Source of the DNA: Mytilus edulis
Lineage: Eukaryota
Length of the DNA stretch: 64,000 bases
NCBI RefSeq assembly: GCF_963676685.1
Contig: NC_092349.1
Location: 86,056,001 to 86,120,000, forward strand
Direction of reading: 5' to 3'
The translations under genes were made by a program, and so were the position numbers. Numbering within the stretch: the stretch's first letter is position 1; every line of letters starts with the position of its first letter. Shown here piece by piece: positions 29,909-64,000 of the stretch. Under the pieces are notes generated by a model. That model was given only the letters and a program-made list of their open reading frames with translations, ran no database searches and was not told the DNA's origin.

Positions 29909-32096
29909 AGTTTAAACAGTATTTATTAATGAAAAATGTCAAGACAAATATTACAATGTTACATAAAGTTCAAATATGGGATTCGGAAACAAGTTTGGAA
30001 AAACTTTTATAAATCCGTCTCCCTAAAAAAAAACAAAAAAAAATCTATTTAACATACAATATTACGTGCCAACAGTATATTCATTTTATGGTAGCATATG
30101 ATACATTGAATAAATAAACACACACACACACGCAAAAAAAAAAATAATAATAAAAAAAAATACAAAAAATACAAAACAAATAAAATAAAGGAAAACAATA
30201 AAAAGTGAGGGAAAAAAAACAAAAAAAACAAAAAAAAACAAACAACAAAAACAGTCAACTCTTATTTACTTTTCTAGACAGTCACTGGAACCAACACACA
30301 CGTTCGACCACAATCAATTACAACGGACAATCCACTCGATTTTACATCATATTTAAAAAAAAAAGTATAAATATATAATATATATATACATATACTAGAT
30401 TAACTTTCAAAACGTTTTGTTTTATTTATGTATTCAGAAACTTTATGAAATATTTGCATATTGTCCTCGTCAGCTTTTAGACCATCCCCATATAAGATAA
30501 TCTTAAGATTAAAACAAGAGATCGTCCCGATAGTATCCCTTCGAATTTCATTATATTTTGGACATTTGAAGAAATAATGAGAAGTAGTTTCTACTTTACC
30601 ACAGGAACACAGTGCGTTCTCGATTAGATTTTTTTAAAATAGATGGTCCCTTAGAACACTACTCTGGAGCCTTATTCTTGCTAAGCATATCTGTTCTCTT
30701 CTACAGCCGAAGTGAAAATACAATGGTATTTTATTAATATTTTGAGAGAGATAAGTCTTAAAACCTGATTTTGATTGATTTAGACGGATGTCGTCAGGAA
30801 TATTGTTCCAAAGGTTTACTACGGCTGGTAGAAATGACTTTTGATAATAGCTTGTTCTGCATAATACAGTTTGTAAATTTGAAGACCCCCTGGTCCTGTG
30901 GTCGTGTAGATCTAGTCTCTGATTTGGGACTAACACAGAAAGATAATCAGGACAATCTCCGTGAAACATTTGATGAAATTTTAATAACTTATGTTTGTCA
31001 CGTCGAGACTGGAGAGTTTCCCAACCGGTTTCATCGTACAGCAACTGTCTCGATGTTATCTTAGTACCACCTGTAACGATTCTTGCTGCTTCTAGTTGTA
31101 AGTTTTCCAGAGATGTTTTCAAATAATTAGGTATATTATCCCAGACAATGTCCCCATATTCTAAGACTGGGCGAATGAAAGATAAATAAATAGTTTCTAA
31201 ATGTTTCCTTTTAAGTTTAAACTTTAACTTCCGGAATAATGCTAATCTAGGAATAGCCTTATCAATAATCATTTTTACATGATTATTCCAGCTTCCATCT
31301 TCATTTATAATAACCCCTAAATGCTTATGCGACTCAACTTCTTTTATGATATTAGTATCCATATACACTGGCGGGTGGTGGGGTTTTTGATGCCTTTTTG
31401 AAATGGTCATTATTTCTGTTTTGTTTGGATTGAAATTGACAAGCCATTGCTTTGACCAATTATGTATTTTCTCAATATCTTTATTTAACTTTTCTGCCGC
31501 TTCATATTCGTTATCAACCACTATATAAATTGAGGTGTCATCAGCAAAAAGTTTTATATCACATTCGATGTCATTAACTATGTCATTTATATAAATGAGA
31601 AATAAAATAGGACCCAAGATAGACCCTTGGGGTACCCCAGCTGAGACATGTTCGTTATTGGACATTTCTCCACCAATGACAACCTGTTGCCTTCTTGAGT
31701 TTAAATAGCTTTCAAACCAAAGTAACAAGTTACCATTAATTCCTATTTTTCTAAGCTTATATAGTAAGCCTTTATGCCAAACTCGGTCGGAAGCTCGACT
31801 AATGTCGCAGAAGATTACCCTGACCTCTTTCCCTTCATCTAATGCTTTACCAAAATCATTAATAATACATAGTAGTTGGTTTACTGTCGAATCACCAGGG
31901 ATGAAACCAGACTGGAATTTTGTTAATAAAGAATTTGTAATAATAAAGTTAAAAAGGTATTTAAAAATGCATCTCTCCATTGTCTTACCAATGTTAGACA
32001 GCAAAGATATAGGTCTATAATTAAGTAAAAATCTGGGCCACCTTTGTTCTTATAAACAGGTATAACATTTGCTAGTTTCCACACATCTGGAACATA
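29909..32096 (-). mobile_element. 5'-truncated non-LTR retrotransposon (LINE, CR1/L2-group-like) with RT remnant, 3' UTR and 11-bp TSD
   Basis: ORF 32004-30634 carries RT motifs QSGF, DISRASDRVWH, GVPQGSILGPILFLIYIND, LFADD and HKHLGV. The frame continues past a premature TAA into CSCG..ETTSHYFFKC (CCHC) and stops at 30400. TTTGTATGTTT is duplicated at 29898-29908 and 32097-32107. Confidence 0.93.
30400..32096 (-). pseudogene. Disrupted LINE ORF2 (reverse transcriptase plus C-terminal zinc knuckle)
   Basis: No endonuclease domain (5' truncation), probable frameshift near 32020-32040, premature stop at 30634-30636, and Phe-to-Ser change in the DxxxAFD motif. Confidence 0.88.
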
Positions 32097-46600: not shown

Positions 46601-48000
46601 AAACCATCAGTCTAAATTATACAAAAAACACGAGAAACGGGAAACCCTTATGAACCATATCAACAAACGACAACCACTGACCAAACGAAAACCACTGACC
46701 AACAGATCCTAATTTGTTTTGTTATAGATAAGATCGTTAGTTTTTCGTACGAATTGTTACTAATTTTTCATTTTTGGGCTTTTATAGCCGACTAGACGGT
46801 GTTTTTTTCTTTTCCCTGTTTGAGGATGTTCTGTTGTCTATGCATGCTTGCTTATATATATCCACTCCATTTGAACTCTGACTGATTGTTGTCTCTTTTG
46901 TAATAATACCCCAATTACTTATTTTTAGATAGTTTCAATAATTTTTCTTAAAAATGACACTTAAAAAAAGAGAGAATAAGAGCTTTTTATATATTAAGGA
47001 ATGCGTTTTAGTTAAATTTCGCTAAATATATGTAATTTGTTGTATTTGATTAGAAATGATTGAATTCATTTCCATGATACGCGGGTTATGTTCTTCACAT
47101 ATATTTAATGATGGTATAATACTAAGGATTGTACTTGCTATTCATATGATGAAGACATAATCTTTCAATCAGTTTAATTGAGGTCTGGAGCTGGCATGTC
47201 AGTAACTGCTAGTAGTCCTTTGTTTATTTATGTATCATAGTCATTTTGTTTAGTTTCTTTTGTTACCTATTTTGACATTGGACTCGGACTTCTTTTGAAC
47301 TGAGTGTTACGGTGCGTAATTGCTGGGTGTTTGTTTTTTCTACATTGGCTGTTCTTTGGTCGTGTTGTTGTCTCTTTGACACATTCTCCATTTCCAGTCT
47401 CAATTTTATTTTCATCATAGCCTTGATTGAAATTCTATATTTGCGCAAGACGCGTGCTTCGTCTACAAAAGACTCATAAGTCAATACATTCTAAAATAAA
47501 TCATAAAAAAAAATAATAATAAACAAAATATTTCATTTAAAAATAATTTTATAAGCCTGACTTAGGTCACGTACAGAAATATAGATGTTAGTTGAACAAA
47601 TATTGATTGTTTTAAACTTCATGTTTAATCTCTGACACGAAGATTTATAGTTTTAATAATATGTTTTAGCTAGCAATTGCAATATGTCTATAAACATGAT
47701 AAAGTCAAGTAAAACCTATACTGAAAAAACGCAGAACTATTCCTTTTCATGAAAGTATTTTTATTTTTAAATTTATAAATTTTCTCTATTTTTGTTTATA
47801 CTGATGGTAAACATCATTATGCTAATTCATCCTCGATCTTATTGAGATAATTCTACAATGGTCTACGCATGACGAACAAGGTCAAGTAAAAATACATTTT
47901 TTATCTGTGTACTAAACAATGTTTTGAGGTGAATATTTTTATGACTATTCGTAGTACTAGTGTATATGTATTATATATCCTTTTATGATAATATAATAAA

Positions 48001-48181
48001 ATGAGTATCATGTTAAGACGAAGTTTTCTATCTGGATTGAACAAATGGATATATATAAACAGCGCATACTGCTCTTCTGCATGGAATTTCACGGGAATCC
48101 AGTTGCAGTCAAAGAACTATGGTCATAATGTTCGGAAGCTTGGAACTGCTGCTGCTGCAACTTCAGACTTTGTCAAACCGG
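48001..48181 (+). CDS. hcp: HCP exon 1: putative mitochondrial targeting presequence (60 aa)
   Basis: [60 protein letters not shown] is R/K/S/L-rich with no acidic residue until D56. The phase-1 donor G|GTAGGT fits the exon 2 acceptor TTTCAG|AC (gives Asp then Met). Confidence 0.78.
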
Positions 48182-51100
48182 GTAGGTACTAAATACTGAA
48201 TATGAGACGCATATATAAATAATAAGTGTGACAGTGTATATGTAAAAATTGAATGTCCCCGTTTTTAGCATCGTTACACGATTAGGAACATGGGAAAAGA
48301 GCTGTCGATATTCTGATCAATCATGATCAACAAATATATAAACTCATCTATATATTATTAATAATAACTTTAACTTGATTAGAATTTTTTTTCATTATTT
48401 GTACAAACAAACAAACAAACAAACAAACAAACAAACAAACAAACAAACAAACAAACAAACTAATACCTTTATTAGAGTCTCTCCTCTTTAAAATATTTGA
48501 GTATACAACTGAATATAATATTAACAGACCAACTCACAAAAAAGCTACTTTAAAATGATTTATTTGAGACTGTAAAACACACATTAAAAATACATTTATA
48601 TTATACATATCATATATCAATACTCAAATTATTAAAATTACTTTCTACATTACATACACTATTAAAAACATTGCAAATCTGCATATTCTGGGCATTCTAA
48701 CAACACAATGTATGTTTCTTGTGTATATTATGTTTGCATTTTAACCCGTCAGGGATTGACCATTTTGCAATAAAGTTATGTATATATATATAAAAAGTGA
48801 AGTTAACATTTTTGTTAAAAAAAAATATTTAAACTTGAAGCAACATAAAGGTAAGGAACCCCTTAAGGTAATAACGCTCGCCAGTTTGATGAGTCGTTTG
48901 TTTGATAAATATACCTTGGGTAAAGAAAAAATGAAATAGAAAAAAAACGTCTTATTTGGAGTCAAAGTTTTTGTGTGGCCTGGTTTTGGTCTCTAGAATT
49001 TCATGTTCTCATACTCATATTGGATTCCGTTAGTTGGTAATTCTACTCTCAATATATATTGTTATATGGGCCGTGTAATTTGGTAAATAAAAGTAATTCA
49101 TTCTATTCTATAGTAGTCAATCGACAACCTGTTTAAAGTTTGTTGTAGAAAATGTAGGAAAGAGACGAGGTAGTAATGGCAAATGTGGCAAATGTGGCAA
49201 ATGTGGAAATTGATAGAAAATAAATAAAGCTGTACAAAATAAAAACTGATGCAACAAAAACAGGATTTACAAATTCAAATACCTTACTGTCCCTCTATCT
49301 TTTAAAAGTTTAATGCACATCAAGTTTGTGAAGTGTATTTAATATATATTCAAATTATTACACCAAGTGATAAACAAACTGTTACAGCATGTTAAAGTCG
49401 GTATGATAGAACGTAAATTACAATTTAAATGCGAACTGTATTCTGGTTGAATGCATTTTATCAAATATTCATCCGGGTAGATCAATCAAAATACCATTAA
49501 ATTAAACGCAGAACTGTTAAATCAGATTACCTATTCATCTTACCAAACCCTTCCCATAAAGTACTTTAGTTGAATATATACAGCATAGGGTGATGTAATA
49601 CGACAATAAATATCATTGCTTGAGATTAATATACCAAAATGAAGCTACATGTTGGGCTTCTAATAAAAGTTCATTTTTTACTGAAATTTCCTCGTAAGCT
49701 TATCTAATACACTGAATATGGAGGTTATCAAGTGATTTATCGATCCTTTTCTTATAAATCCTAATTATAAGCGTATACGTGCCAAGCTTCAGTCACGTAC
49801 TTGCACTATGCACATTTTGTACCATGACTTGACAATAAATTTTTCATTTCATCTATTTGAGTCACTTAAAAACAAATCGTTGAAGATTTCGTAATTTGAA
49901 AAATACAAGAAGCAGAGTTCTTTTTTTAACTAAACATAAAAGATACCTCGAAATAGCTATAATGGTGTAGTTTAAGTTTTCGCTAAGTTTTAAGTACAGA
50001 TAATACGATGGAACAGGTCCCAATTATTATATGAATAAAAATAAGATTGTCGTCATTGAAGCCTTAAAACATATTTTTGGTAAAAAATATTTTGCTGATT
50101 ATTTTCGATTTCAACTTGAATACAGATTTTGTTTAAGAGAAGATTTTTAATAAATAGGACAGACACCAAGTGATAGCAATTGCTCACAAATTTCCTACAG
50201 GACACGTGTTTAATTAAACCATACATGTATATTGGATTGTAGCACTCATACATATATTCGCAAAACTTCCAACTTTTTTTAACCCCTTTTTCATGTATAA
50301 TTAGTCAACAGAAAAGGGGGGATCAAAGATTGGTATAGTAACTATACAAATCATTGAACATATCAATAAGTCTTTGATAGCCAACAAATTTATTGTTTAT
50401 GTATTATTTTTGGTAAGTGCTCCAATGTGTAATGTCGGACTTCTTCTATACTACTAACATGACTAAAGGAAGAGACCTATTTCATTGAGCCGCATCTCCT
50501 TTGAAACCATACAAAGTCGGAAGTGATATGAAGTATAAATGTAGTGTTTTGTAATTCCCAAATTTGTCTTTGAAACAATCTTTTTCCACAGAAAACGCCA
50601 ATTTTTGAGAAATAACCCATTTCGGAGACCGTTATCGATCCGTGTCTTATAAGCTTTCAGTCGAAGTACTGCACGCGAAATTTAAGGTTTATGTACCCTT
50701 CTGTAGCCATTTTTGTACGATTTTTTCAAACCTCAATTGTATCAAAACTAAAGATATAATAAATAATAGAGATAGGCCATTTAGTACATGTTCCAAGGGG
50801 AAACTTGATGCAAAACATTATTTTTTACTGTTTCATTGCATTTGATAGAAAAAGAGGACTTTGTGGCAAATAAATCAAGATTTTTATAGAAAATCCACAG
50901 CCTTTAATACAGAGATTTTTGTTATAAAATTTGAAACATAAATTACTCACTTGATTTTCTATGATGTGCTAGTGTTTATTTTTTACAAAAAGTTCTAAGT
51001 AACCTGTAAATTCCAAAACACCTCGTGCTGAGTCACTAAAGTCGAGCGCACCCTAAAAGGTGTACTTGATTTTGGCCATATTTATACTTGTCTTAACCAA

Positions 51101-54100
51101 TAACTACATTTATAAACTTGTTTTAAGGAAATCAATGCTAGCACTGCATGCAATAATCCTATATCTATCAGTCATCAAATTGCCAAATATGAGAGTACAA
51201 GGATAAAGGCTGTGGATTTTCTATAAAAATCTTGATTTATTTGCCACAAAGTCCTCTTTTTCTATTAAATGAAATGGAACAGTAAAAAATAATGCTTTGC
51301 ATCAAGTTTCCCCTTGGAATATGTACAAAATGGCCTATCTCTATTATTCATTATATCTGTAGTTTTGATACAATTGAAGTTTGAAAAGTTCGTACAAAAA
51401 TGGCTACAGAAGGGTACATAAACCTTAAAAATTCTTTGTTTCAACACATGCCCAATTGTACCACGATTTCGCGGGTTTCATCTAGTGATATACAAATAAA
51501 CAAGTCATGTTATAAAACCAAAATATCTTAACACGGTTGCTTTACCCGAATATATGTTTAACATCGTTTCCCTTTACTAATTATATTGATTTATTGTATT
51601 TGTACTATTATTTCAGACATGTTTTGTTTCCAGTGCGAGCAGACCAAGAGCCGAAAAGGCTGTGTAACCGTAGGAGTATGCGGTAAAACGTCACAGGTAT
51701 CTGCACTACAAGATCTACTAATGTATGCTGTGCAGGGGTTGTCCATGTATGCCAATAGAGCTATTAAATCAGGCATCACTATGTCTAAAGAATGTGACCT
51801 ATTTATACAGCAAGCTATGTTTAGGTACATACAATATTCTTAAAGAAGATAGACATAAAGCATGGACAAAGAGAGGAATTTTTTCGATTAAATACAATTT
51901 GGGATAGATGAATTTGTTCTAAACATCGGATATGGGAATATACACAATAGAAAAGGATGACCATAATGAAAAAGAATAGATAAAAATGATATAAAATTAA
52001 AAAATAGATCAATTGAGTGATAAAATTTAAAGATTAGAAAAATAATTGTCCAACGAATCTTAATAGAGAAAATGGCCTAACATTATAGAATGCAAAAATG
52101 AAGACCTACCACCAAGACCCTCTTAACTGACACAAAGTCTCCTATGTCTATATAAATACTATCTATTTCTGCTATAAAGGCAAACGTGAATATAACTAGT
52201 CTAATTTAGAATTAACGCCCGTATAAAGCAGAAATAAAAAGTATATGTCTCATAAGTTCTGCATAGCGTAAGGTTACGACAGGGCATATATATTTGGTTT
52301 AAGGAGTGTAAGTTGTAATTGAGTCTGAGATCAATTAAGGCACCACGCAAATCCACACAATCTTTTGAAATGATAGCCATCGCGGTTAAGAGTCACTGTC
52401 TAAAGAACGAAATCATAGATGCTAGTATTTCAAAGTCTTTATATGGGTGTCTGCCTCGAGGTGCATACTTATTGTTCAGAATATTTAAACATAGGCAATG
52501 CATTTGTCTGTACTGACTTTTGCATTCTTTGTTTTTAAGCACCGAACATAAAGATAGGAATATGCAATATTTTCGTCGATAAAGCAATACTTGACACTAT
52601 GGGGATACACATTAAAATAATATCATTATTTATATATTAAACTACTTTATTGCCTGCTTGAGACTACTATTTGCTCTTACTTTACAGCACATTGACAAAT
52701 GTGAACTTTGACCAGGATCGCTTTCCGGAATATATCAAAACTGCAATCAAACATCGCGATGCCATCAAGAAAATTATGGAGGAAAAATCATCGCAAACTC
52801 TTGACGAAAAACTCAAGCATGGTCCTGCTAGCTGGGTTCCAGAATCATATGATTTGACATATTTAGAAGACGAAGGTAAATTACTAAGGCATGCTACGTA
52901 CTGATACTAATTTAAGTCTTGTCAACGATTTACAATGGAACTAAGTTTTTGTATTTGCGGAGGTTAAGCACAGGCACTTTGTCTCTGAAAAACAATAATC
53001 CATATATAACCATTTATTAAAGTATATCAATCTAATTAAAAACCGATATCTCATCGCTCCCGTTTTCTGATATGTCGGGACGCGACACATCAGAAAACGG
53101 GAGCGATCAGAGATCGGTTTGACATATCAGAAAACGGGAACGATGAGAGATCGGTTTTTAATTAGATTGAAGGTATATAGGATTTTTTTCTGAGAAAAGT
53201 GCCTGTGGTTTGTGATTGAGATTGGTTCGGTACCACTACCAACTGACTTTGTTATAGAAAATCATGTAAATTTGAGACGTGTTCACTTATCGAAATAAAA
53301 TATGTATTACATGGTAATCAAGAAAAAGACTTGAGTATAAAAACAACGCGAAACACCGTGTGATCTTTGTTGTGACATGCTTAGCTCGAGTAAGTGAGGT
53401 CTTAAGCTGTAATCCAACCTTGGTCAAATCAGTTGTATTATCAATGCTGCTCCATCGAAAACTCGGTAACTACGATTATAAATAAGAACAAATATTGTTT
53501 GGCTTCTTGAGTCATTAGCCAAAGGATTGAAGGGTGATATCCCACCTGTGGCCTATTGCAATTTAAGATACGTGCATTTTTAAAAGTTCGACTCAGTGAG
53601 TTAGTACAAATGTACCACACGAGAAACTCGGCAGCTTTCCCTACTTAAAAACAAATAATAATACAGAGAAGTTTTATTCGTTTGATATTAAAATGCCATC
53701 TTCAAGAATAATTATGCACGTATTTACGGCTTGAAATAGAACAGTCATCATTTATTCATGATCACCAGTTGACCAAGTTAAATCTTTAAAAACGTGCTGT
53801 CAATCTGTGGTCAATCGGTAGACGGTTGACTTCTAAGTATCATTTTCCTACTATAAAATTAAGAATGGAAATGGGGAATGTGTAAAAGAGACAACAACCC
53901 GACCAAAGAGCAGAAATCAGCCGAAGGTCACGAATGGGCCTTCAACACAGCAAGAAAAAACCCCACCTGCAGGCGGGCTTCAGCTTTTTATGTCTATGAC
54001 AAAAGACCTCGAAATTTTCTTTATAAAAATCTTATGTAGGCGAAACGCGTGTCTTAGTTGATATAAACAGTACTTATTTTTTTTAAAAATCTTACATTAA

Positions 54101-57100
54101 AGTAGAACAATTTTTCATAGCACGTGCCTTCATTAACAAATACTATATAACTAATCTGGGATCACTTTATTTTTGAAACTTGATATGCATAATCTCTATA
54201 AAAATGAGTGTTGATCATGCATGAATGAATTATAACCGACTTATCTTTACAACTTTGTTTACTTTGTAAATGTAGGTCTAAAAGTTGGTGTATTAGAAAA
54301 CCAGAGTATTTATGGACCAGACGTGAATGGTGTTCGTTACATGACCATATATGGCATTAAAGGATTATCTGCATACGCCTGCCATGCTAATGCGCTTGGA
54401 GAAGAAGACCCTGAGGTTTCCACTTCCTTATACGAGGTATATTGTTGAATAACTCATACTCATCACATTCCAATGGTTAATTTCCCTCGTGGATAAGTCA
54501 GAAGACCAAATAAGAAAAAAAAGTGTTTTTTTTTTGTTATCCTGATAACTCTATAAATGAAAATCTCTCATAAGTCAGTGTGGCTACATGTTAACTTAGA
54601 TTTAAATCTTGTTTGTATGTTTGAGTACACAAATGAAATATTCTGTCCGTCTTTCTGTCTAATATGTTATGAAATTCCCCGAAGTCCTTACGTATACATC
54701 CATTCGTTGTCAAACATTTTTGGTAAGCGAATTTTACATAAAAAAGGTTTTTCTTTATTCGGCATTGATGAAAACGGTCACACCTGTACATTTTACATGA
54801 ACATGGAGCTTATGTACTATAGTATGACTATCTATTACTCGACTAATTAAATAGAACAAACAAAAAAGAAAACGGAGTAATTATAAAGCTATGTTTTATT
54901 ATTTCTTTTTTCAGCTCACGTTTTCTTTAAAAATGATGATGTCTGCTGATTTTTACAATTCAGGTTTTGGACTTTTTGACTAGTGGAACAGAAGAAGAGC
55001 GTCATGATCTGACTACGAATCTAAAACTTGCTCTAAAAGTAGGGGAAATAAACCTCCGAGTGATGGAGCTGTTAGATAAAGGTCACCGGAAGCAGCTTGG
55101 TATACCATCTCCCTCAACAGTTAACAGAGCACCTGTCCAAGGAAAGGTACACTCTTAAAGTATTTTATTAGTTACCAATGAGACAGGAGTTTGAGCAAGT
55201 TTACAAGAGCACAAACAATTTGTTTTAACGAAAATAATACTACCAATTTCGCGTGTCCGAAGAGATTTTCTGAATTTAACTTCCTTTTTATTTCAAGTTA
55301 CGAGCAAAAAAAAACAACAACATGTAAGCATTTTTAACCCCTTTTTGACCATTTTTGGTAGCTTGGTACCTTGATACTAATTCCGCTATATATGGGCATG
55401 TATTGTCCTATGTCGTTACTTTTGTTGACCAGTATACGTTGACTTAAGTTATAAATGTCGTGTTCTTACCTATAGTAACGTGCTGCGTATAGATTATCGG
55501 GTTTTCAACACATTGATATCGTAAAATATCAGCCGCGAGCCACAATGTGAACCTTTTTGGCGAGTAAGCGTAGCGAACGATCTAAAAAGTTTCACATTGT
55601 GTCGAGCGGCTGATATTTTACGATATCTATACGTAGAAAACCCGATTATCTGTTTATCGTCTTTTTTCCTCTCCCTAAGACAGTTTTACGCTTGACGAAA
55701 GCAAGCTTGATAACGTGTGACGTCTCTGATAACTTCTCCTCTCACATTGTGACGTCGCTGATAATGCCTGGTCTCGTTTTGAAGTTTTGATATGAGAATT
55801 ACTGAGCGACAGAGCAGGGTGATATAGGCGTAGGGAAGGACAATAATATATATGATATTACATTCATTCATTTCTTTATTTCTTCTAGATCACGAGATTC
55901 AATGAACAACTATATGTAATCAGATTAAATTACAAAAGTTTGCAAATCATAATAACACAATATAATATTACAATATGTACAATAAGTACAGTTAATATGT
56001 AATTGTTTATAACTAAAGAATTCGAACATGTCGTCAAGAAAATTGCTCTCATTAACGACGGTTCATGCACTGGCACATATACGAATCGTCGTTCTCGCTA
56101 GTCTGTTATACATGCAGCGACACAGTGTGCAACGTGCATGTGGCAAAGCTTCCAAAAACTGTCGGTGTCGATATTGATTGTTGTTACGTGATTGCCAAAA
56201 ACAATGCTTGTCGTATGAATCAAGTTCCACAAATAAATGCAATGGAAGTTTTTCAATTATGAACTCCCACCACACATCTCTGATTGTATGAGTTCCACAA
56301 CAGCTATAACATGGATGTACATGCATCTAAAACTGACTGTTACATGGCTCGCGCGTGCCTCCTGAGATTGATACAATTCACCTTTTTTCTTTACTTTTGC
56401 TTCTTTCACTCAGGTAGCAAATTGTTAGATTCCACTACTAAAAAACTATTATTAGCAAATATAATGTCATCATTAAAGCCTACATTTCATGGTTTCGCGT
56501 GTTGCTTTTAAATTTACTTCTTAAACAAATGGATTGACAATAAAGGACTTACCATTAATTTTTTAAATAAAAGCAAGGGAAAAGGCAAATTAAATACTTT
56601 CAGATAAACTGGCTTGACAAATAACAACTACAGTTTGTTATTTTACTCCCATTTTTCCCTTTATGATTCAATAAGAAATAATGCATATTTTAAGTTCTTG
56701 CTCGTAATATAACACACCAAGGGTGATATGATTGCTCAAATGAAAGGACCAACCGTTCGAAGGTTTCCTTTGTGCAATCCTAGAGGTGGATCCATTTTTT
56801 ATATCCGATATTACACTGTATGTATGAGCCTAAGCTATGTACATGCTTGTATATTTAAATGTGCATACAAGAAATAACGTTTACATCTGTATTGTAGTGT
56901 ATACTGGTTTCAGGACATGACCTGATGGATCTTTATGCTATTCTGAAACATACTGAAAAAGAAGGAATAAACGTCTACACTCACGGAGAGATGTTACCAG
57001 CACACAGCTATCCCATTTTGAGAGAGTTCAAGGTACATACCCATATACACAAATGACACATATTAACGAATAAAGATCTGAGAAAACTATGTTTTACCTA

Positions 57101-60100
57101 TTATATATATTGTTTAAGGTTTAATGAGTGGAGCTGGAACTGCCTTCTTATCCTACACTTGCAGTTATCCATGTTTCGGTGGGAGTCATGGTTTATGTGG
57201 TTTATTGACTATCGTGATCTAATGTGTTTGATTCCTTCCCGTCGGCATTCAATTTTGTTCTAAAACCAAAATGTCACCTTTAACAAGGCAGAATGATAAT
57301 GCTTTTTTTAAACAAACAAATATCGAAATAGAAATATTTTCTTAATTGACCAATACTAACATAACATACATCTTGGACTATCTGAAGATACATATTGTAT
57401 TATCTGATTAAGAAATTTCGTTATTCAAATTTTGTCTATGGATTCAAAAATGAAGTAAACTTCATAAACTTTATTCAGGGACCAGCTAAGTCCCACCTCG
57501 GTCGCGGGATATTCTCTCTGAGTTGAAGACTCATTGGTGGCCTTCGGCTGTTGTCTGCTATTTGGTCGGGTTGTTGTCTCTTTTACATATGCCCCGTTTT
57601 CATTCTCAATTTTATCGTAAAAACTTAGATATGACACTAAACTTCGACTTTGAACTTTTTCTGAAGTACATTTCATCTTCTCGTAGAATCTGGTTGGTCA
57701 GTTTGGTAGTGCATGGCAGAATCAGAAGATTGAATTTGGAACTTTTCCAGGACCAGTTGTCATAACAACAAATTGTGTTATCGAGCCTTTGAAGTCTTAC
57801 AGAGATAGACTGTATACTTTGAACGAGACAGGAATCCATGGAGTTAAACATATCAATTTGGAAAATAAAGAGGAAATTTCTCAATTGATAAACGTAAGCT
57901 TAAGGTAGATAGGGTGTCTTCCTCCATCTTGGATTTGGAAATACCAGAAAACAAGGTCTAGATCTTTAATAGAATGTGCAAATTTTTAGAGAAGTAGATA
58001 ATTCATGTGTAAGAAATTCCACTTCTACATAGAAAATGACATGTTTTATCATATTTATGATTGTATTTTACAAAAAACAGAAATTTTTTGTTCGAACAAT
58101 TTTTTTCCAACTTTGCCACATAAGGGGATGCAACTCAAATGCAAGGGCAGATAATGCAGATTATGGTATTTTTACAATAGAATGTGTTAGGAATTTCTCT
58201 ATTTTATTATGTAACAAGAAAACAGGTCCGGTGACCCCATTTTTTCTTTTTCTTAACTGAAAGCATACTATTAAAGCTATCTTCTCATATGTTATCTCAA
58301 AATTCTATGGTGTAGTTTACGCTTTATTGCAGAAAATTGGGGTTTCCATGCATAATCTATACAAAATTTGACAATTTTGAACACCGTGTAGCATGAATAA
58401 AAGCCCGGTGACCCATTCTTTTTATTACTTTTTTTTAAAAAGCATAATATAAACTTCATTTTGGCAAATTATTAAAAAATTCTATGGATTATAATTTAGA
58501 CACCCCATCTACCTTAACACGTATATATTTTCACTACTGTGGCAAGTATTGTCTAGAAAGGTTCCCAAGAGTGTGCAATTGAGATTTCATCATAAGATAC
58601 CTTAATGTATTTTGCCGTATCATAAAATAAGCTTTGTATTTGAAAAACGAAGAACAACGTACAGACAATCAAAATTTCACTATTGCGTTACATAATTTAT
58701 TTTTGGCAAAGAATGATTAAAAAAAAAAAATGCATCTGGTTAAATATAGTACACTCATCACAGATCTAGTTTGATAATTTGACGCGTGTTTTGTCTTTAA
58801 AAGAGTCATCAGTGACGCTAAAATAAAAAAGGAGTAGAAAAGGGCTCAACGAAGAAACAGTTTGCTCCATACACAGACAAAATTGAATTTCACTCGAGTC
58901 AATTTCACGTATATTTAATTTCAATGCGAATTTCACATCAAACGGGCTTATTCGTAAAAATCGCGTGATTATTATATTAAAATTGATACCAATTTCAATT
59001 TTGAAAAACGACACGTTTTGTAAAATAACTTGCATCAGATATCTCGTGACCTGACCTTGAACCTTACCTCACGTTTGAGAGATTATAACATGAAATGTAG
59101 AATGCACCTCAGTCCAGAAGAACTTCAAAAGAACAAGCATAAGACTGATTTTGTGTGAGAGAGTTTTAATACGACACAAGGGTTTACAAACTGAACGATT
59201 TCATTAATACTGAATTTTTAATGTAATATTTACAGCATGCTAGTTATGTAGTTATGGTCATTGTGGTCATTGATAAAGTAGAAACCATTTATAATATATC
59301 TAAATAACTTTATCATCCATTGAATGCGTGACACGTCCCTGAAGAAAATATTGCAAACAATTAGTTCAATTTTTGACCAAGACTACATTTACCTTTTAAA
59401 AAACCTGGTTCAACTCTCTGATACATGAATAGCGTTATATAGTTATAGGAATAGTGCAACTTATCAAAGCAACCTTCATAGGATAAGCTACTTATCAAAA
59501 TATATCTGTTTAATAATTTGTATGATCGGCTTGGCTTAGACGGATACATAATATTGTAAGGTATTCTACAGTTTGTTTTTCAGAACAAACATTTCTCATG
59601 AAATGAAAATGAAAGAAATTAAACACAGAATATGGAAATAAATAAATCCCTAAGGCTCGCACCCCCTTTTAAAAGAGATGAATACGAATGATATAATTTG
59701 AAAGTGTAAGTGCGGTGTTTGTAGAAGAGATCTACAATGAAATACATTTTGGAACACATTTTTGAAAAAGAAAATATAAAGAAATTAAACACAGTATATT
59801 GTAATATATAGTAGCTTCACATCCTTTTGTTTCAACAACGTTTCAACAAAGGTATGATTATATCATGAATTTTATAAGCGTAAGAGTGAAATGGGAAGGA
59901 GGAACCCTACAATGAAATATAAGGATAATACTTCTTCATTTCCAGCATGCAAAATCACTTCCTGGATTCGACGACAAGACAATTCAGAAGTTTGATAAAA
60001 ATACATTTACTGTCGGCTTTGGAAGAGAGATTATCTTAGATAATGCAGAAAAAGTGAGTTGTGTACAGCTTGGATTGTTTTATTTTTACTTATATTTTTA

Positions 60101-63100
60101 CTCTATTTCATTTGGTGGACTGTAGCAAATAGTCTTACATCAGTATTGTCAAGATTTGTCTTTTACATAATACTTATAGTCATACTAAATAAATATGTTC
60201 TGCGGAATGCCGTATAAAAACACATCCACGTCCGTTCATAATTTTAACCATTTGGCTCCCTAAAAATACCAGGCTTATAATCCAGTTCGCAAGATATACG
60301 TTTCATTGATTTCAATTAAAATCTGATGTTTGTGTTTGGAAATTTCCGTGCTATGCAGGTTGATCTGCAACTCTTCGTTAGTTTATTGAATTACTTTCTT
60401 TCTGTCCCTATCCAACATATTATCTTTTTCACATGGAATGTCACATTTCTTACCTTCAATATGGTCACCTCGTTTTGAAAAATAATCCTGTTTGAAAAAT
60501 TGTTTAATTTGATCTTGTCCTGTAATATATGTTGTTTAGTTAAATAAATGCAATGTATTTTATGCATGGTTGTTGAGACTCTCGACTCGCATATTTGTTT
60601 TGTTACTTCTTCCTTAAACATAATCTTAATCCTTAAATTATGTTTTGAATTACAACATTGCTTATATCATGCTTTTGGCTTCTATTACACAACGATTATC
60701 ATTTCATCGTGTTTCACATTTTTTAAATCCTAAATTCACGTGACTGATTGTACAGTAATCTCTAATACACATGACTATGTCAGGCTTTTGTTACTTTCTT
60801 ACTTATTTAAACTTGTACTTGTACCACTCTTTCTATACATTCATCGGGGTTATGGTATATCACGCTGAAACTTCTGTAGGATTTCTTTTTGAGCCGACTT
60901 CGTCAAAATTGTCCGTCTACCACGATTGGTATCGATAAACATGTTTTATTATGTTATAACTCAATCGAGCGATGATACACTAGTGATAACATGAAGAAAA
61001 GTACATGTAGTTTGTGTAATCCTGATTTTGTTTTTATTCTGCATGTGTAAATATTAGTGTTGTCAAATCGTAAACTTTTGCCTAACCGGTTACAGGGGCG
61101 TAGCTAGAATAAAACGATGTGGAAGCAACTATCGCCGAGCGGAGCGAGGCGAACAAATTTTGGGACCCTTTTATGCAGAAATTTTTTTTCGGTTTTCGGT
61201 TATCATGGTCATAGGACGCCCGGTTAAAAGTGGAGCTACATGTAGATAAAAATTTATGAACGTTAAACTATTAATAAATCTTCTGAATAAACAAGACATA
61301 TTTGTGATACAGAATTTACTCAAAATTGTCCAAAATCTGCTCTTCGGGTCTGGGCAGAAACAAACTTCTCTATTACTTTGTCAATATTCACACTGAAATC
61401 CCGATGAATATGCAGTAATACTATGTATGTTCTGTCGGTGTTCATTGTTGATCGTACATTTGTTTTCAATAAAATACGTAGTACTGTGACTAATAAATCT
61501 CCAGCATGGCATGGTAGCACTCGCGAGATGTTATAAACCAGCTTACGTGTTCGGCATCGAGAGACCTCCCAATTGAATTCGTCAAAATTACATGCCAGAT
61601 CAGTTTCAAATGTCTCAGACAATATTGAGATTTGTTCGTTTGAAATATAACCTACAACACGATGAAGCAGATTCAGCGCAAAAAAAGAGATTTTCTGATA
61701 ATACTTGACGCGACTCCACTCTCCAAATCCCTTATCATATGGTCAACGAACTCAAAAATAATGAGACTTTCCAATACTGTTTTGGCGTTGTTGCAGGGTG
61801 ATTGGCTCCGGTAGTCTGTCGACCACATCGCCTCGGCATATTTTTAACGATATCGAAGGGATCTGATAATTCTAATGCCATTGGTACATCTCATTCAAAA
61901 CTGATGAACTGTACACTGTTAAATGTGCTTCAAACCTACATGTCTTAGACTGAGTATTACAAATTCAAATATTGTAAAAGATACAAGTTACCTTCCGATG
62001 TTGGCATAATCTCAAAAAAAAATAATTTTGAAACCAAATGTCGTTATTTAATGATATTTCATCAATTAAAAAAGTGACAACATAGGTGTTTCCTTTAACA
62101 TTCAATTTTTATTTTGCCATTTCTTTCTTGCATGCCGAATCAATGTGCACGCAACTGCGTGTTAGCGTATAGGGAGCTATGATATTTTTCTGCATGACTC
62201 GAACATCTTCATCAACACTTTTAACTAGGTTGTCAAACTAATATCCGGGATAAACAGAACAGACACCAACAGTCTCCGAACGTTAGATAATACATCACGC
62301 TGTCCGATTCCGATTGACCAACTCGTCTCTCTCTCTTCTGTTTTTGTTTTTTTTTTGTTTTTTTTTGTGTGTGAAAACGACGTGGATGCACGTGCTGTCG
62401 TGCCTCCGGGTAGCTACGCCCCTGGGTTACTTGTATACTCGTTCGACCGATTAACCGGTTAACCAGCATTTTAAGTTAATGTTTGAAGGACTTATCAATA
62501 GTATCCTACACATCGATATAAGAAGATGTGATATGAGTGTCAATGTGACTATATTCCATCCAACTCATACATTTACGTTTTTATAATACGATGAATTGAA
62601 GTTTGGCTTTTGGTTTTATAAGGCTTGTCTGTGAAGATTCCTGTCGAAGTTTGACTTTTAATAATCAAATACACGGTATCAACTTAATTTCCGGTACTTC
62701 AAGAGAATACAGCTCGAAAACCAGCACGGTTGCTATGGACTGTCTTTGCACCAATGGATTTGTCGTTTATATTTGAATCGCAATTCGAATTTACAAAAAA
62801 ATCTATTGACCAACGAATTAGAAAATCATTATAAAGTAAAAATATATGCCGTGTTTTTTTAATGATTTCCCCTACATATCCTTTGTACTTCTGGCGTAGC
62901 ATGCTGTTAGTTTCAACAGCTTGTATCTGAAAAACGGAAACGGTTACCCCCTTTTTTATTTTATATTCTGATGTATTTTTACAAGTAGAATCCACATGTA
63001 AAAATTTTTAAAAATCTGTTGAGAGTTATATTACGTACACTTCGCCTTAATCCTGATATTCGTACCATCATGTATACATAGATTACATTCACGTTGGTTT

Positions 63101-64000
63101 GCTATTTACAGTTTTTGAGTTAGCATTTAGTTTAAAGTATGACAAAGACTTGCACAACGGAGTTTGCATATTTAGATGTAGGTCTACACAATATAAGATT
63201 AAAAATGAAATAATGAAGTAAATCATGAATTGAATCGTACTACTGATTAAAAATTACTGTTAAAAAACAGGAACCTAATACTAAATATTAAAGAAGTAAA
63301 GCTTCTACAGTCGTCCTGTTGTACTACGTCAGGAATATAACAGTTGTTTTCCATTCGTTTGATGTGTTTGAGCATTTGATTTTGCCTTTTGATTCGGGAC
63401 TTTCCATTTTGAACTTTCCTTTGTGTTCGGTATTTTTTTTATTTTATTTTTTCACATGTTAAGAATTGAAAAAAATATACTGCAAGTTGTGATAACTTGT
63501 GTCCGATTTTTTTGTTAATTATCTCTCTCTCTCTCTGCATACAGCCTACTCTATTCTACTCTGTAATAAGAACGAAATGAACAACATATAAAAAGTAACA
63601 AAATCATATTAGTATATGGTGACTTGTAAACTAATAGTTGGTATAGACTTATATTAATCTGGTAATATTTTAGGTTCTTCAAGCAGTAGCCGATGGAGAT
63701 TTGACGAGAATATTTGTCATTGGTGGATGTGACGGTTCGGAACACAAACGTAACTATTTCAAAACATTGGCACACTCATTGCCCCCACAAACGCTTATAC
63801 TTACTATGGGTTGCGCTAAATATAGAATCAACGATAAAGACTATGGAACTCTGGGAAATACTGGAATCCCCCGACTTCTTGACCTTGGACAGTGTAATGA
63901 CAGTTATGGTGCAATAATGGTAGCTCAGGCACTGGCGTCGGCACTCAATACTGACATTAACAGTTTGCCTCTTTCTTTATCATTGTCGTGGTTTGAACAG
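48001..64000 (+). CDS. hcp: Hybrid cluster protein (HCP, prismane / hydroxylamine reductase), spliced gene with probable mitochondrial presequence; 3' end lies beyond the window
   Basis: Hand-spliced exons 48001-48181, 51617-51824, 52688-52875, 54276-54436, 54964-55146, 56898-57032, 57687-57893, 59946-60053 and 63674-64000+. All introns are GT-AG and phase-compatible, giving 566 stop-free codons. Motifs in the correct order: [101 protein letters not shown]. Confidence 0.97.
48403..48460. repeat. (CAAA)n microsatellite, probably the tail of a minus-strand retroposon fragment
   Basis: Perfect CAAA run; on the - strand AATAAA lies just upstream of (TTTG)n. Confidence 0.85.
50686..51424. mobile_element. 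Long-TIR TTAA-flanked MITE (Kolobok-like) in HCP intron 1
   Basis: Inverted arms of about 220 bp (50681-50906 and 51204-51429), highly similar, with TTAA at both ends; mirrored ORFs 50642+ and 51447- show the same symmetry. Confidence 0.88.
51617..51824 (+). CDS. hcp: HCP exon 2: [4Fe-4S]-binding Cx2Cx8Cx5C motif
   Basis: [46 protein letters not shown]...QAMF; boundaries tttcag| and |gtacat. Confidence 0.96.
52688..52875 (+). CDS. hcp: HCP exon 3
   Basis: (S)[28 protein letters not shown]...LEDE; boundaries ttacag| and |gtaaat. Confidence 0.95.
52969..53207. mobile_element. Second copy of the CACAGGCAC MITE with a nested palindromic element (53027-53170)
   Basis: Same termini as 43523-43611; internal inverted repeat TCAATCTAATTAAAAACCGAT...ATCGGTTTTTAATTAGATTGA. 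Confidence 0.8.
54276..54436 (+). CDS. hcp: HCP exon 4
   Basis: (G)[53 protein letters not shown]; boundaries tgtag| and |gtatat. Confidence 0.95.
54964..55146 (+). CDS. hcp: HCP exon 5
   Basis: [61 protein letters not shown]; boundaries ttcag| and |gtacac. Confidence 0.95.
55491..55651. repeat. ~160-bp palindromic element in HCP intron 5
   Basis: Arms AGATTATCGGGTTTTC..GATATCGTAAAATATCAGCCGC..CACAATGTGAA pair with their reverse complement around a GCGAGTAAGCGTAGCGAAC loop. Confidence 0.8.
56898..57032 (+). CDS. hcp: HCP exon 6 (His and Glu ligands of the hybrid cluster)
   Basis: [45 protein letters not shown]; boundaries tgtag| and |gtacat. Confidence 0.96.
57687..57893 (+). CDS. hcp: HCP exon 7
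   Basis: [69 protein letters not shown]; boundaries cgtag| and |gtaagc. Confidence 0.96.
57904..58513. mobile_element. TTAA-targeting MITE (Kolobok-like) in HCP intron 7
   Basis: TIR GGTAGATAGGGTGTCT / AGACACCCCATCTACC, flanked by TTAA on both sides. Confidence 0.85.
59946..60053 (+). CDS. hcp: HCP exon 8
   Basis: [36 protein letters not shown]; boundaries ttccag| and |gtgagt. Confidence 0.93.
61093..62424 (-). mobile_element. Deleted hAT5-type DNA transposon with transposase remnant, in HCP intron 8
   Basis: TIR CAGGGGCGTAGCTA / TAGCTACGCCCCTG; 5-bp TSD GGTTA. The - strand remnant ...[32 protein letters not shown] (61320-61622) resembles the hAT C-terminal dimerisation region of ZMYM1/THAP12-like transposases. 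Confidence 0.88.
63674..64000 (+). CDS. hcp: HCP exon 9 (runs to the window edge)
   Basis: [109 protein letters not shown]; acceptor ttttag|. Confidence 0.96.

What the first reader, a model, noticed from the sequence alone, without database searches (positions are those of the whole stretch)
48001..64000. Intron-rich, apparently mitochondrion-targeted hybrid cluster protein (HCP/prismane) in an animal genome
Seen in the sequence: nine phase-compatible GT-AG exons give 566 stop-free codons of clear HCP. The gene sits among host MITEs beside a normal nuclear gene (MTO1), so it is not bacterial contamination. Established: HCP carries a [4Fe-4S] cluster plus a unique 4Fe-2S-2O hybrid cluster. 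It is typical of anaerobic and facultative prokaryotes and some microbial eukaryotes (anaerobic protists, green algae). Reported activities are NO reductase (NO to N2O), hydroxylamine reductase and S-nitrosylase. I know of none in vertebrates, flies or nematodes. Inference: this animal, probably a hypoxia-tolerant bivalve, encodes its own mitochondrial anaerobic NO or hydroxylamine detoxifying enzyme. That could protect respiration during emersion or anoxia and might be an endogenous source of N2O. Automated database annotations may exist, but I know of no functional description in animals.
Basis: partly seen in the sequence, partly recalled or inferred. Interest (0 to 1): 0.95.

Follow-up and report, generated by a model that had tools for sequence, protein, structure and literature searches.

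The report
Mussel nuclear gene for mitochondrial HCP
The blue mussel carries an intact, spliced and transcribed nuclear gene for a hybrid cluster protein, an iron-sulfur enzyme typical of anaerobic microbes, with a mitochondrial-type leader; databases already auto-annotate it, but I found no published study of its function in any animal.

Summary
Nine GT-AG exons (window 48001 to 64174, 174 nt past the window end) encode 623 aa, of which 566 codons lie inside the window. The model is identical to an NCBI protein on the same 93.9-Mb contig, so the genome is most likely the Mytilus edulis RefSeq assembly and the gene is auto-annotated as 'hydroxylamine reductase-like'.

- **Family:** it is a full-length HCP, scoring about twice the NCBIfam equivalog cut-offs. 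All 12 cluster residues are present, and the predicted fold matches solved HCPs (TM 0.92-0.95).
- **Transcripts:** RNA contigs from three runs carry the exon 1-2 and 2-3 junctions.
- **Targeting:** exon 1 encodes a 61-aa basic, disordered leader. All 24 animal homologues examined have such a leader, and 14 carry an R-3 cleavage-like motif. Mitochondrial targeting is therefore likely but not shown.
- **Relatives:** named homologues are bivalves, a brachiopod and annelids. They form one clade inside eukaryotic HCPs, next to an ichthyosporean, which argues against recent bacterial transfer.
- **Second copy:** a copy 33 kb downstream is truncated and frameshifted.

Function (anaerobic NO or hydroxylamine reduction) is inferred. 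I found no functional paper on animal HCP. The scan's index held only notes on this same stretch. Verdict: a real, moderately surprising new member of a known family.

The parts
47866..48000 (+). 5' UTR and transcript start region
   Evidence: RNA contigs collinear with the genome begin at 47866 (run X7) and 47960 (run X4), and no upstream exon is seen. In-frame stops lie 12-15 nt before the ATG.
48001..48181 (+). Exon 1: start codon and 60 1/3 codons of the N-terminal leader (putative mitochondrial presequence, aa 1-61). A phase-1 donor, GTAGGT, follows the exon.
   Evidence: The joint 48180->51616 (GT..AG) is present in contigs of three runs. The leader has 7 K/R and only 2 acidic residues, both at its end, plus an RKLG motif 17 aa before the first Met of the mature domain. 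pLDDT is below 50 for residues 1-55. Transcripts show in-frame indel variants of 6 nt at 48049 and 3 nt at 48127.
48182..51616 (+). Intron 1, holding a (CAAA)n microsatellite near 48400-48460 and a MITE-like element with 226-nt inverted arms at 50681-51429
   Evidence: The element is covered at depth 100-500 by many RNA contigs that also fit other places, so it is a repeated host element and not part of the mRNA.
51617..51824 (+). Exon 2 (aa 61-129): begins one codon before the Met that aligns with residue 1 of bacterial HCPs, and carries the four N-terminal cluster cysteines C64, C67, C76 and C82 (spacing C-x2-C-x8-C-x5-C)
   Evidence: The joint 51822->52686 is present in three contig runs and one raw read.
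52688..52875 (+). Exon 3 (aa 130-192), with the conserved TLTNVNFD motif
   Evidence: The loose end after 52877 reads on into the start of exon 4.
54276..54436 (+). Exon 4 (aa 193-246)
54964..55146 (+). Exon 5 (aa 247-307)
56898..57032 (+). Exon 6 (aa 308-352), with hybrid-cluster ligands His314 and Glu338
57687..57893 (+). Exon 7 (aa 353-421), with hybrid-cluster ligand Cys382
59946..60053 (+). Exon 8 (aa 422-457)
63674..64000 (+). Exon 9 (aa 458-623). It runs on to window coordinate 64174 (L001:1612-2112) and holds Cys476 (the persulfide position), Cys504, Cys531, Glu565 and Lys567. Lys567 and the last 57 codons lie just past the window end.
38138..41110 (-). 5' exons of the neighbouring MTO1-like (GIDA family) gene, head-to-head with the HCP gene about 6.9 kb away. 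The rest of that gene extends leftwards beyond the window start.
   Evidence: Pfam GIDA matches exon by exon at C6:86094138-86097110, and again at 86018136-86020887.

Best explanation
This is a functional nuclear gene of a mussel, most likely Mytilus edulis, for a eukaryote-type hybrid cluster protein.

**Shown.** Nine exons are spliced into an mRNA of about 2 kb that encodes 623 aa. Residues 62-623 form a complete HCP, with the four N-terminal cysteines for the Fe-S cubane and all eight residues that hold the 4Fe-2S-2O hybrid cluster.

**Inferred.** Residues 1-61, encoded almost entirely by exon 1, act as a mitochondrial presequence that is cleaved near L47/G48. The matrix ISC machinery would load the clusters. 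During valve closure, emersion or sediment anoxia the enzyme would take electrons from a matrix donor, perhaps a ferredoxin since no hcr-like partner is fused or adjacent. It would reduce NO to N2O, or hydroxylamine to ammonia, and so protect respiration and Fe-S enzymes from nitrosative damage.

**Origin.** The gene belongs to a lophotrochozoan clade with shared exon borders. That clade sits inside eukaryotic HCPs next to holozoan protists. The best reading is old vertical inheritance with loss in most other animals, not recent transfer from bacteria.
For: **Gene model**
- The model is exact and equals NCBI protein P0430 on the same contig.
- The exon 1-2 and 2-3 junctions are present in RNA contigs of three runs, including a 1971-nt full-length contig, and one raw RNA-seq read carries the 2-3 junction.
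- Fourteen runs, one recorded as RNA and the rest guessed to be RNA, hold 0.11-0.17 of the sampled words; the exonic fraction of the stretch is 0.126.

**Family membership**
- Pfam Prismane matches residues 62-608 at E 2e-135.
- NCBIfam equivalog NF003658 scores 664.7 bits against a cut-off of 367, and TIGR01703 scores 639.3 against 360.8.
- The best solved relative is E. coli Hcp, 7DE4, at E 8e-143.
- All 12 ligand positions are present, and they are invariant across 40 aligned homologues.
- The AlphaFold model has pTM 0.83 and superposes on 8CNR, 1GN9 and 7DE4 with TM 0.92-0.95 at 2.1-2.3 A.

**Leader**
- It is absent from the bacterial and Mastigamoeba HCPs examined.
- It is 54-72 aa long in all 24 animal sequences, with net charge +3 to +8 over the first 40 residues.
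- There is no hydrophobic run longer than 6 residues.
- R-x-[FYLM]-[AGS] lies 13-22 aa before the mature Met in 14 of 24 sequences. Shuffled leaders average 2.7, and none of 2000 shuffles reached 14.

**Phylogeny**
- The animal clade has support 100/99, and the bivalve branching order follows the species tree.
- The sister group is Amoebidium plus an unnamed sequence, with support 90/80.
- The eukaryotes separate from the closest bacteria at 100/99.

**Exon borders**
- ORF fragments from other eukaryote-sized contigs stop aligning exactly at mussel exon borders, at aa 129, 193, 352/353, 421 and 457/458.

**Precedent**
- Acanthamoeba HCP is mitochondrial by proteomics and microscopy and is induced by hypoxia and anoxia (PMC13632651).
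Against: - No localisation predictor or experiment was available, so the mitochondrial call rests on composition, a motif and comparison.
- Ten of the 24 animal leaders lack the strict R-3 motif.
- Nothing here shows cluster content, activity, the electron donor or induction by anoxia.
- The one raw-read RNA run gave only a handful of reads over the exons, so expression can be low.
- The physiological substrate of HCP is debated even in bacteria (NO, hydroxylamine, S-nitrosylation).
- Support for the sister relation with Amoebidium is only moderate, and the choanoflagellate sequence does not join that group.
Confidence: 0.75

Rival explanations
1. The HCP is bacterial or protist contamination, a chimeric scaffold, or a very recent bacterial insertion that is not a working host gene.
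For: HCP is mainly a prokaryotic family. An HCP cDNA from the tubeworm Riftia was once dismissed as contamination (PMC2175520).
Against: - The gene has eight GT-AG introns holding host repeats, and its G+C content (0.30-0.36) matches the rest of the window.
- Spliced transcripts exist.
- It lies 86 Mb into a 93.9-Mb contig among animal-type sequences: an MTO1-like gene, a GPCR ORF, reverse-transcriptase elements and a STAND-ankyrin ORF.
- Four Mytilus species have the annotated gene on chromosome-sized contigs.
- The closest bacterial sequences are only 43-49% identical and form the outgroup in the tree.
Confidence: 0.02
2. The enzyme is a real host HCP but is not in the mitochondrial matrix. 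It could be cytosolic, dual-targeted or secreted, and the leader could be a poorly conserved extension with another role.
For: - The leader sequence is barely conserved.
- Ten of 24 leaders lack the strict cleavage motif.
- No predictor or experiment was available.
- Anaerobic protists such as Mastigamoeba have leaderless HCPs.
Against: - Every animal homologue, and both holozoan protists, keeps a basic leader that is poor in acidic residues, 37-72 aa long, even though its sequence drifts.
- No leader has a signal-peptide-like hydrophobic core; the longest hydrophobic run is 6 residues or fewer.
- The motif sits at a fixed distance from the mature start far more often than in shuffled leaders.
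- Transcripts carry only in-frame indels in exon 1.
- Acanthamoeba HCP is experimentally mitochondrial.
Confidence: 0.15
3. The protein is mitochondrial, but its main job is not bulk NO-to-N2O detoxification. It might scavenge hydroxylamine, transfer NO groups to proteins (S-nitrosylase signalling), or act as a peroxidase. Animal N2O would then still come from gut and shell microbes.
For: N2O emission by bivalves is currently attributed to gut denitrifiers and shell biofilms (PMC5640653). No copper nitrite reductase gene that could feed NO was found in this genome.
Against: The sequence cannot separate these activities, because the active site is identical at every ligand position to enzymes with NO reductase activity. 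NO sources other than NirK exist in animal mitochondria (established knowledge, not tested here).
Confidence: 0.3
4. The lophotrochozoan ancestor acquired the gene by lateral transfer from another eukaryote, such as an alga or protist, rather than inheriting it vertically from the holozoan ancestor.
For: - The distribution in animals is very patchy: only bivalves, a brachiopod and annelids are named.
- HCP is a classic laterally transferred gene among protists (PMC1484493).
- Holozoan sequences are not monophyletic in the tree, and the branch joining animals to Amoebidium has only 90/80 support.
Against: - By profile score, the two best non-animal matches are a choanoflagellate and an ichthyosporean, and the undescribed opisthokont 'Opistho-2' also ranks high.
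- The best tree puts the ichthyosporean next to animals.
- The topology inside the animal clade follows the species tree, and exon borders are shared.
Confidence: 0.3

Closest known systems
RefSeq 'hydroxylamine reductase-like' / 'hcp' proteins of Mytilus (M. californianus XP_052075359.1, M. coruscus CAC5413459.1, M. galloprovincialis, M. edulis)
   Same: One member of the 90% cluster, P0430 (623 aa, on the 93,901,275-bp contig), is identical to the model. The others are 93-95% identical over the full length, leader included.
   Different: These are automatic annotations only. I found no publication that discusses them.
Escherichia coli Hcp (PDB 7DE4, class II HCP, NO reductase working with the NADH oxidoreductase Hcr)
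   Same: It is the best solved match (E 8e-143, 42% identity, TM 0.94). Residues matching E. coli His249, Glu273, Cys317, Cys405, Cys433, Cys458, Glu492 and Lys494 are all present.
   Different: The mussel N-terminal cysteine spacing is C-x2-C-x8-C-x5-C, not the longer E. coli C-x2-C-x11-C-x6-C. The mussel protein has a 61-aa leader, eight introns, and no hcr-like partner fused or adjacent.
Desulfovibrio HCPs (PDB 1E2U/1W9M, 1GN9; class I)
   Same: They share the class I-type cysteine spacing and the three-domain fold (TM 0.91-0.95).
   Different: Overall identity is lower (37%) than to the E. coli enzyme. They are bacterial, with no leader and no introns.
Acanthamoeba castellanii mitochondrial HCP (PMC13632651, 2026)
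   Same: It is a eukaryotic HCP in an aerobic organism that faces anoxia. The authors confirmed it as mitochondrial by proteomics and microscopy and found it induced by hypoxia and anoxia. They propose NO removal or nitrogen metabolism, and an ancestry possibly reaching back to LECA.
   Different: It is amoebozoan, not animal. That paper describes anaerobic ATP-producing pathways (hydrogenase, PFOR, ASCT1B) as absent from yeast and animals and does not mention animal HCPs in the passages I read. I did not compare its sequence here.
Green-algal HCPs (Chlamydomonas and relatives) and holozoan protist HCPs (Salpingoeca punica, Amoebidium parasiticum)
   Same: They fall in the same eukaryote-dominated group, at 43-49% identity, and carry N-terminal targeting-type extensions.
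   Different: They come from different lineages, and their organelle targeting was not examined here. Intron data for them were not available.

Membership tests
Hybrid cluster protein (Pfam PF03063 Prismane; NCBIfam NF003658 / TIGR01703 hydroxylamine reductase) | A full-length match to the family profile above the curated cut-off | tested here: met
   Prismane matches residues 62-608 at E 2.1e-135 (452.7 bits, cut-off 27). NF003658 scores 664.7 bits against a cut-off of 367. TIGR01703 scores 639.3 bits against 360.8. The CODH model TIGR01702 scores only 45 bits against 478.
Hybrid cluster protein | An N-terminal four-cysteine motif for the cubane (or 2Fe-2S) cluster | tested here: met
   C64, C67, C76 and C82, with spacing C-x2-C-x8-C-x5-C (class I type). 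These positions are invariant in 40 aligned homologues.
Hybrid cluster protein | The hybrid 4Fe-2S-2O cluster ligands: His, Glu, Cys, persulfide Cys, Cys, Cys and Glu, plus the neighbouring Lys | tested here: met
   H314, E338, C382, C476, C504, C531, E565 and K567 align with E. coli H249, E273, C317, C405, C433, C458, E492 and K494. The E. coli residue numbers and roles come from my own knowledge and were checked by counting in the alignment. All eight are invariant in alignment A2.
Hybrid cluster protein | The three-domain HCP fold | tested here: met
   The AlphaFold model has pTM 0.83. Foldseek gives TM 0.92-0.95 and rmsd 2.1-2.3 A to 8CNR, 1GN9 and 7DE4, whereas CODHs reach only TM about 0.5.
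Hybrid cluster protein | Actual cluster content and NO or hydroxylamine reductase activity | not testable with these tools
   This needs anaerobic expression, EPR and enzyme assays.
Nuclear-encoded mitochondrial matrix protein with a cleavable presequence | An N-terminal extension that is absent from prokaryotic homologues, is basic and poor in acidic residues, and has no signal-peptide core | tested here: met
   The mussel extension is 61 aa with 7 K/R and 2 D/E, both near its end. The 24 animal homologues have extensions of 54-72 aa with net charge +3 to +8 over the first 40 residues, and the longest hydrophobic run is 6 residues or fewer. The bacterial sequences have no extension. The model is disordered over residues 1-55.
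Nuclear-encoded mitochondrial matrix protein with a cleavable presequence | A processing-peptidase motif (R-2 or R-3) near the end of the leader | tested here: inconclusive
   RKLG sits at residues 45-48. The R-x-[FYLM]-[AGS] motif occurs in 14 of 24 animal leaders at a fixed distance from the mature start, against a mean of 2.7 in shuffles. Ten leaders lack it, and the related sequences are not independent.
Nuclear-encoded mitochondrial matrix protein with a cleavable presequence | Demonstrated import or localisation | not testable with these tools
   No localisation predictor or experiment was available. The only experimental precedent found is Acanthamoeba HCP.

The most novel reading that the evidence does not exclude
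Bivalves, brachiopods and annelids may have kept an ancestral eukaryotic mitochondrial NO-reducing module that other animals lost. If so, during anoxia the animal's own mitochondria, and not only its gut and shell microbes, would turn NO or nitrite-derived nitrogen into N2O. Part of the N2O flux measured from benthic macrofauna would then be of animal origin.
Probability: 0.2. Interest if true: 0.85.

Novelty: new member of a known kind. Interest (0 to 1): 0.6.

Why it matters
HCP is treated as an enzyme of anaerobic microbes and a few protists. A conserved, expressed animal version with a mitochondrial-type leader shows that some animals keep part of the anaerobic nitrogen-oxide toolkit. It fits the recent proposal that mitochondrial HCP dates back to early eukaryotes (PMC13632651).

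It also gives a concrete candidate gene for how intertidal and sediment-dwelling invertebrates tolerate NO and nitrite during anoxia. And it makes a standing assumption directly testable: that N2O from bivalves and worms is purely microbial (PMC5640653).

It is not a new kind of system. Genome pipelines already annotate the gene.

Tried and rejected
- **Genomic loci of other animals.** As a proxy I used ORF fragments that sit in the same 90% clusters as full-length transcripts.
- **Joined model.** I never typed or sent the joined spliced model to a search tool. Exon 9 was searched by reference. The whole protein was used only through the database id P0430, which turned out to be identical to the model. 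Inside scripts, the joined model was built from the files.
- **Copy 2 as a working paralogue: rejected.** It lacks exons 1-2 and all but a stub of about 40 nt of exon 3. It has a 1-nt deletion at codon 519 that removes C531, E565 and K567. Its RefSeq product is a 221-aa fragment. The low dN/dS of 0.14 against copy 1 suggests the decay is recent or that gene conversion has occurred. I cannot exclude an assembly error at the 1-nt deletion.
- **Contamination or recent bacterial transfer: rejected**.
- **Copper nitrite reductase (NirK, TIGR02376).** I looked for it as a possible mitochondrial NO source, as in Acanthamoeba. The genome gave only weak multicopper-oxidase-like matches (36 bits or less against a cut-off of 296), so none was found.
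- **Literature.** Searches for animal HCP found only two items: a list entry in the Manila clam genome paper (PMC5499747), and a Riftia cDNA dismissed as contamination (PMC2175520).
- **Earlier findings.** A word search of the scan's own findings returned nothing.
- **Raw-read run X24.** It gave too few reads to measure expression.
- **Not run.** I did not run an AU test of holozoan monophyly, and I could not identify the species behind the unnamed Logan transcripts.

Full report
**Where the window is.** The window is C6:86056001-86120000 of a 1.37-Gb genome. G+C content is 0.28-0.36 throughout, with no compositional break at the finding.

**The observation.** A six-frame Pfam search of the whole genome found Prismane (PF03063) matches only at two nearby places on C6. 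One is the reported gene. The other lies about 33 kb downstream.

Reading the frames and splice sites gave nine exons with AG acceptors and GT donors. Their coordinates are 48001-48181, 51617-51824, 52688-52875, 54276-54436, 54964-55146, 56898-57032, 57687-57893, 59946-60053 and 63674-64174. They join into 1872 nt, which is 623 codons plus a stop.

The last exon continues 174 nt beyond the window to a TAA that is followed by AATAAA, so it is not disrupted. In-frame stops lie 12-15 nt upstream of the ATG at 48001.

**The gene is already annotated, and the genome can be identified.** Exon 9 was searched by reference. A full-length relative was then used as a query. Cluster look-ups followed. One 90% cluster holds P0430, a 623-aa NCBI protein on a contig of 93,901,275 bp. 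That is exactly the length of C6, and P0430 is identical to my model.

The same contig carries XP_071180978.1, labelled 'hydroxylamine reductase-like [Mytilus edulis]'. The genome is therefore most likely the M. edulis RefSeq assembly. Homologues 93-95% identical over the full length are annotated in M. californianus, M. coruscus ('hcp') and M. galloprovincialis.

The whole protein was used only through the id P0430.

**It is a host gene and it is transcribed and spliced.** Fourteen runs, one recorded as RNA and the rest guessed to be RNA, hold 0.11-0.17 of the sampled words of a 10-kb stretch. The exonic fraction of that stretch is 0.126. The 20 runs that hold the stretch or a part of it come from 13 studies.

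I laid four runs on 47501-53500, which is 6000 letters as prescribed. The result showed two joints:
- 48180->51616 (GT..AG) in contigs of three runs.
- 51822->52686 (GT..AG) in the same three runs and in one raw RNA-seq read.

The result also included a 1971-nt contig that runs from 47960 through exons 1, 2 and 3 and onward. The loose end after exon 3 reads into the start of exon 4.

The introns hold MITE-like inverted repeats at 50681-51429, 53027-53170 and 55491-55651. Many contigs that also fit other places cover these repeats.

The neighbourhood is animal-type:
- an MTO1-like GIDA gene on the minus strand, whose 5' exons lie at window 38138-41110
- a rhodopsin-type GPCR ORF
- reverse-transcriptase ORFs
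- DEAD-helicase and DUF6589 ORFs
- an nSTAND3-ankyrin ORF

Contamination and chimerism are excluded.

**What the protein is.** Residues 62-608 match Prismane at E 2e-135. The NCBIfam equivalog models for hydroxylamine reductase score 664.7 bits against a cut-off of 367, and 639.3 bits against 360.8. The CO-dehydrogenase model fails its cut-off.

The best solved relative is E. coli Hcp (7DE4, E 8e-143), followed by the Desulfovibrio and Methanothermococcus HCPs. I counted along that alignment. The residues that match E. coli H249, E273, C317, C405, C433, C458, E492 and K494 are mussel H314, E338, C382, C476, C504, C531, E565 and K567. The roles of the E. coli residues come from my own knowledge.

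The N-terminal cysteines are C64, C67, C76 and C82. All twelve positions are invariant in a 40-sequence alignment spanning animals, protists, algae and bacteria.

The cysteine spacing, C-x2-C-x8-C-x5-C, is the class I type. Overall identity, however, is higher to the class II E. coli enzyme (42%) than to the class I structures (37%).

An AlphaFold model (mean pLDDT 82.5, pTM 0.83) superposes on 8CNR, 1GN9 and 7DE4 with TM 0.92-0.95 at 2.1-2.3 A. Residues 1-55 are below pLDDT 50.

**The leader.** Exon 1 supplies residues 1-60 and the first base of codon 61. The Met that aligns with residue 1 of bacterial HCPs is residue 62, the second codon of exon 2.

The 61-aa extension has 7 K/R. Its only two acidic residues are at positions 56 and 61. 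It has no hydrophobic run longer than four residues.

All 24 animal homologues examined have an extension of 54-72 aa with net charge +3 to +8 over the first 40 residues. Salpingoeca and Amoebidium have similar leaders. The Mastigamoeba and bacterial sequences have none.

The leader sequence itself is barely conserved, but one motif recurs. R-x-[FYLM]-[AGS], the form of the R-3 processing site (established knowledge), lies 13-22 residues before the mature Met in 14 of 24 leaders. Shuffled leaders average 2.7, and none of 2000 shuffles reached 14. The related sequences are not independent, so this is supportive and not decisive. Transcripts carry only in-frame indels (6 nt and 3 nt) in exon 1.

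Animals have no plastid and the leader has no signal-peptide core. A mitochondrial presequence is therefore the best reading, at about 0.8, but no predictor or experiment was available.

**Relatives and origin.** A profile search found about 25 clusters scoring 898 bits or more, followed by a gap down to 820 bits. The named members are:
- bivalves: Mytilus, Mercenaria, Dreissena, Mactra, Mya, Sinanodonta and Solemya
- the brachiopod Lingula
- the annelids Owenia and Helobdella

The rest are unnamed transcript assemblies of about 2 kb that encode 600-646 aa with leaders. No gastropod, cephalopod, ecdysozoan, deuterostome or non-bilaterian was named. The search scores only the 8000 candidates that share most words and only proteins of similar length, so absence is not proven.

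The next-best hits are the choanoflagellate Salpingoeca punica and the ichthyosporean Amoebidium parasiticum. The undescribed opisthokont 'Opistho-2' also ranks high.

A careful maximum-likelihood tree of 53 sequences, built with the leaders removed, gave the following (quick trees):
- The animals form one clade with support 100/99.
- The bivalves are monophyletic at 100/99, and Solemya and Sinanodonta branch first, as in the species tree.
- Amoebidium plus an unnamed sequence is sister to the animals at 90/80.
- All eukaryotes are separated from the closest bacteria at 100/99.

ORF fragments called on other eukaryote-sized contigs, up to 2.6 Mb long, stop aligning exactly at mussel exon borders:
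- Seven fragments from four clusters end at aa 129.
- Others cover 132-193, 355-421, 352-458 or begin at 457.

This indicates shared intron positions, although in one lineage exons 7 and 8 appear to be fused.

Together these results argue for old inheritance within Lophotrochozoa. They are compatible with descent from a holozoan ancestor followed by wide loss. An ancient eukaryote-to-animal transfer is not excluded.

**The second copy.** From intron 3 to the gene end (53577-64188), the locus is duplicated at window-equivalent 90001-97690, with most of the block at about 93% nucleotide identity. Exons 4-9 are present with intact splice sites, together with a stub of about 40 nt of exon 3 and its acceptor. 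Exons 1-2 were not found.

A 1-nt deletion at codon 519 shifts the frame before C531, E565 and K567. RefSeq models this copy as a 221-aa fragment. Pairwise dN/dS is 0.14, so the decay is recent or the copies have exchanged sequence. I read it as a truncated pseudogene.

**Function and mechanism.**
- Shown: an intact, transcribed HCP with every cluster ligand.
- Inferred from the family's known chemistry: anaerobic reduction of NO to N2O and/or of hydroxylamine to ammonia.
- Inferred from the leader and from the Acanthamoeba precedent (mitochondrial by proteomics and microscopy, induced by hypoxia and anoxia; PMC13632651): action in the matrix during anoxia.

The electron donor is unknown. No hcr-like partner is fused or adjacent, so a matrix ferredoxin is a guess. 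No NirK-type nitrite reductase was found in the genome.

**Literature.** I found no functional study of an animal HCP. The Manila clam genome paper lists the family among reductase families seen only in that clam (PMC5499747). A Riftia study dismissed an HCP cDNA as contamination (PMC2175520). N2O emission by bivalves and other macrofauna is attributed to gut denitrifiers and shell biofilms (PMC5640653).

**Verdict.** This is a new, undescribed-in-print member of a known enzyme family. It is already auto-annotated and is shared by several lophotrochozoan groups. It is moderately surprising, and it makes an endogenous animal route from NO to N2O testable.

**Limits.** The scan's index held only notes on this same stretch.

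Noticed in passing
L011:6708 to L012:3673 (C6:86146708-86153673; window-equivalent 90708-97673): A partial tandem duplicate of the HCP gene. It has exons 4-9 plus a stub of about 40 nt of exon 3, and most of the duplicated block is about 93% identical to copy 1 at the nucleotide level. A 1-nt deletion at codon 519 shifts the frame. RefSeq models it as a 221-aa 'hydroxylamine reductase-like' protein (XP_071180978.1). dN/dS against copy 1 is 0.14.
   Followed up: yes
window 48049 and 48127 (exon 1): Transcript contigs from other individuals carry a 6-nt deletion and a 3-nt insertion in the leader exon. Both are in frame, so the presequence length is polymorphic while the reading frame is kept.
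   Followed up: partly
window 50681-51429 (intron 1): A MITE-like element with 226-nt inverted arms that are 95% complementary. RNA contigs that also fit other places cover it at depth 100-500, so the element family is abundantly transcribed somewhere in the genome.
   Followed up: partly
L009:1130-1225 (window-equivalent 65130-65225): An alternative annotated product (P0438, 655 aa) uses a donor 2 nt before the stop codon. It adds a 32-aa C-terminal tail from an extra exon about 1 kb downstream. I did not check transcript support for it.
   Followed up: partly
window 16764-18092 (+): A 443-aa open frame with a rhodopsin-family 7TM domain (E 6e-12). It appears to be nested in an intron of the minus-strand MTO1-like gene.
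   Followed up: no
window 30637-32049 (-) and L012:5118-5570 (-): Reverse-transcriptase (RVT_1) ORFs of retroelements, one inside the MTO1-like gene and one just downstream of HCP copy 2.
   Followed up: no
L010:604-2769 (+) and L010:4803-5885 (-): Between the two HCP copies lie DEAD/Helicase_C ORFs and a DUF6589 ORF. They may belong to a large mobile element that separated or accompanied the duplication.
   Followed up: no
L012:9721 to L013:2579 (-): A 953-aa intron-less ORF with an nSTAND3 NTPase domain followed by many ankyrin repeats.
   Followed up: no
L013:4176-5388: A minisatellite of about 1.2 kb that stays open in several frames on both strands, with a 27-nt unit (the 9-aa units IIKTGITLS and LLKLVSLYQ).
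   Followed up: no
proteins P0003, P0011, P0014, P0019, P0028, P0151 (not in the window): Several eukaryotic HCPs of 1190-1313 aa, for example from the glaucophyte Cyanoptyche, carry the HCP as the C-terminal half of a fusion. I did not identify the N-terminal partner of about 600 aa, which could point to the electron donor of eukaryotic HCPs.
   Followed up: no
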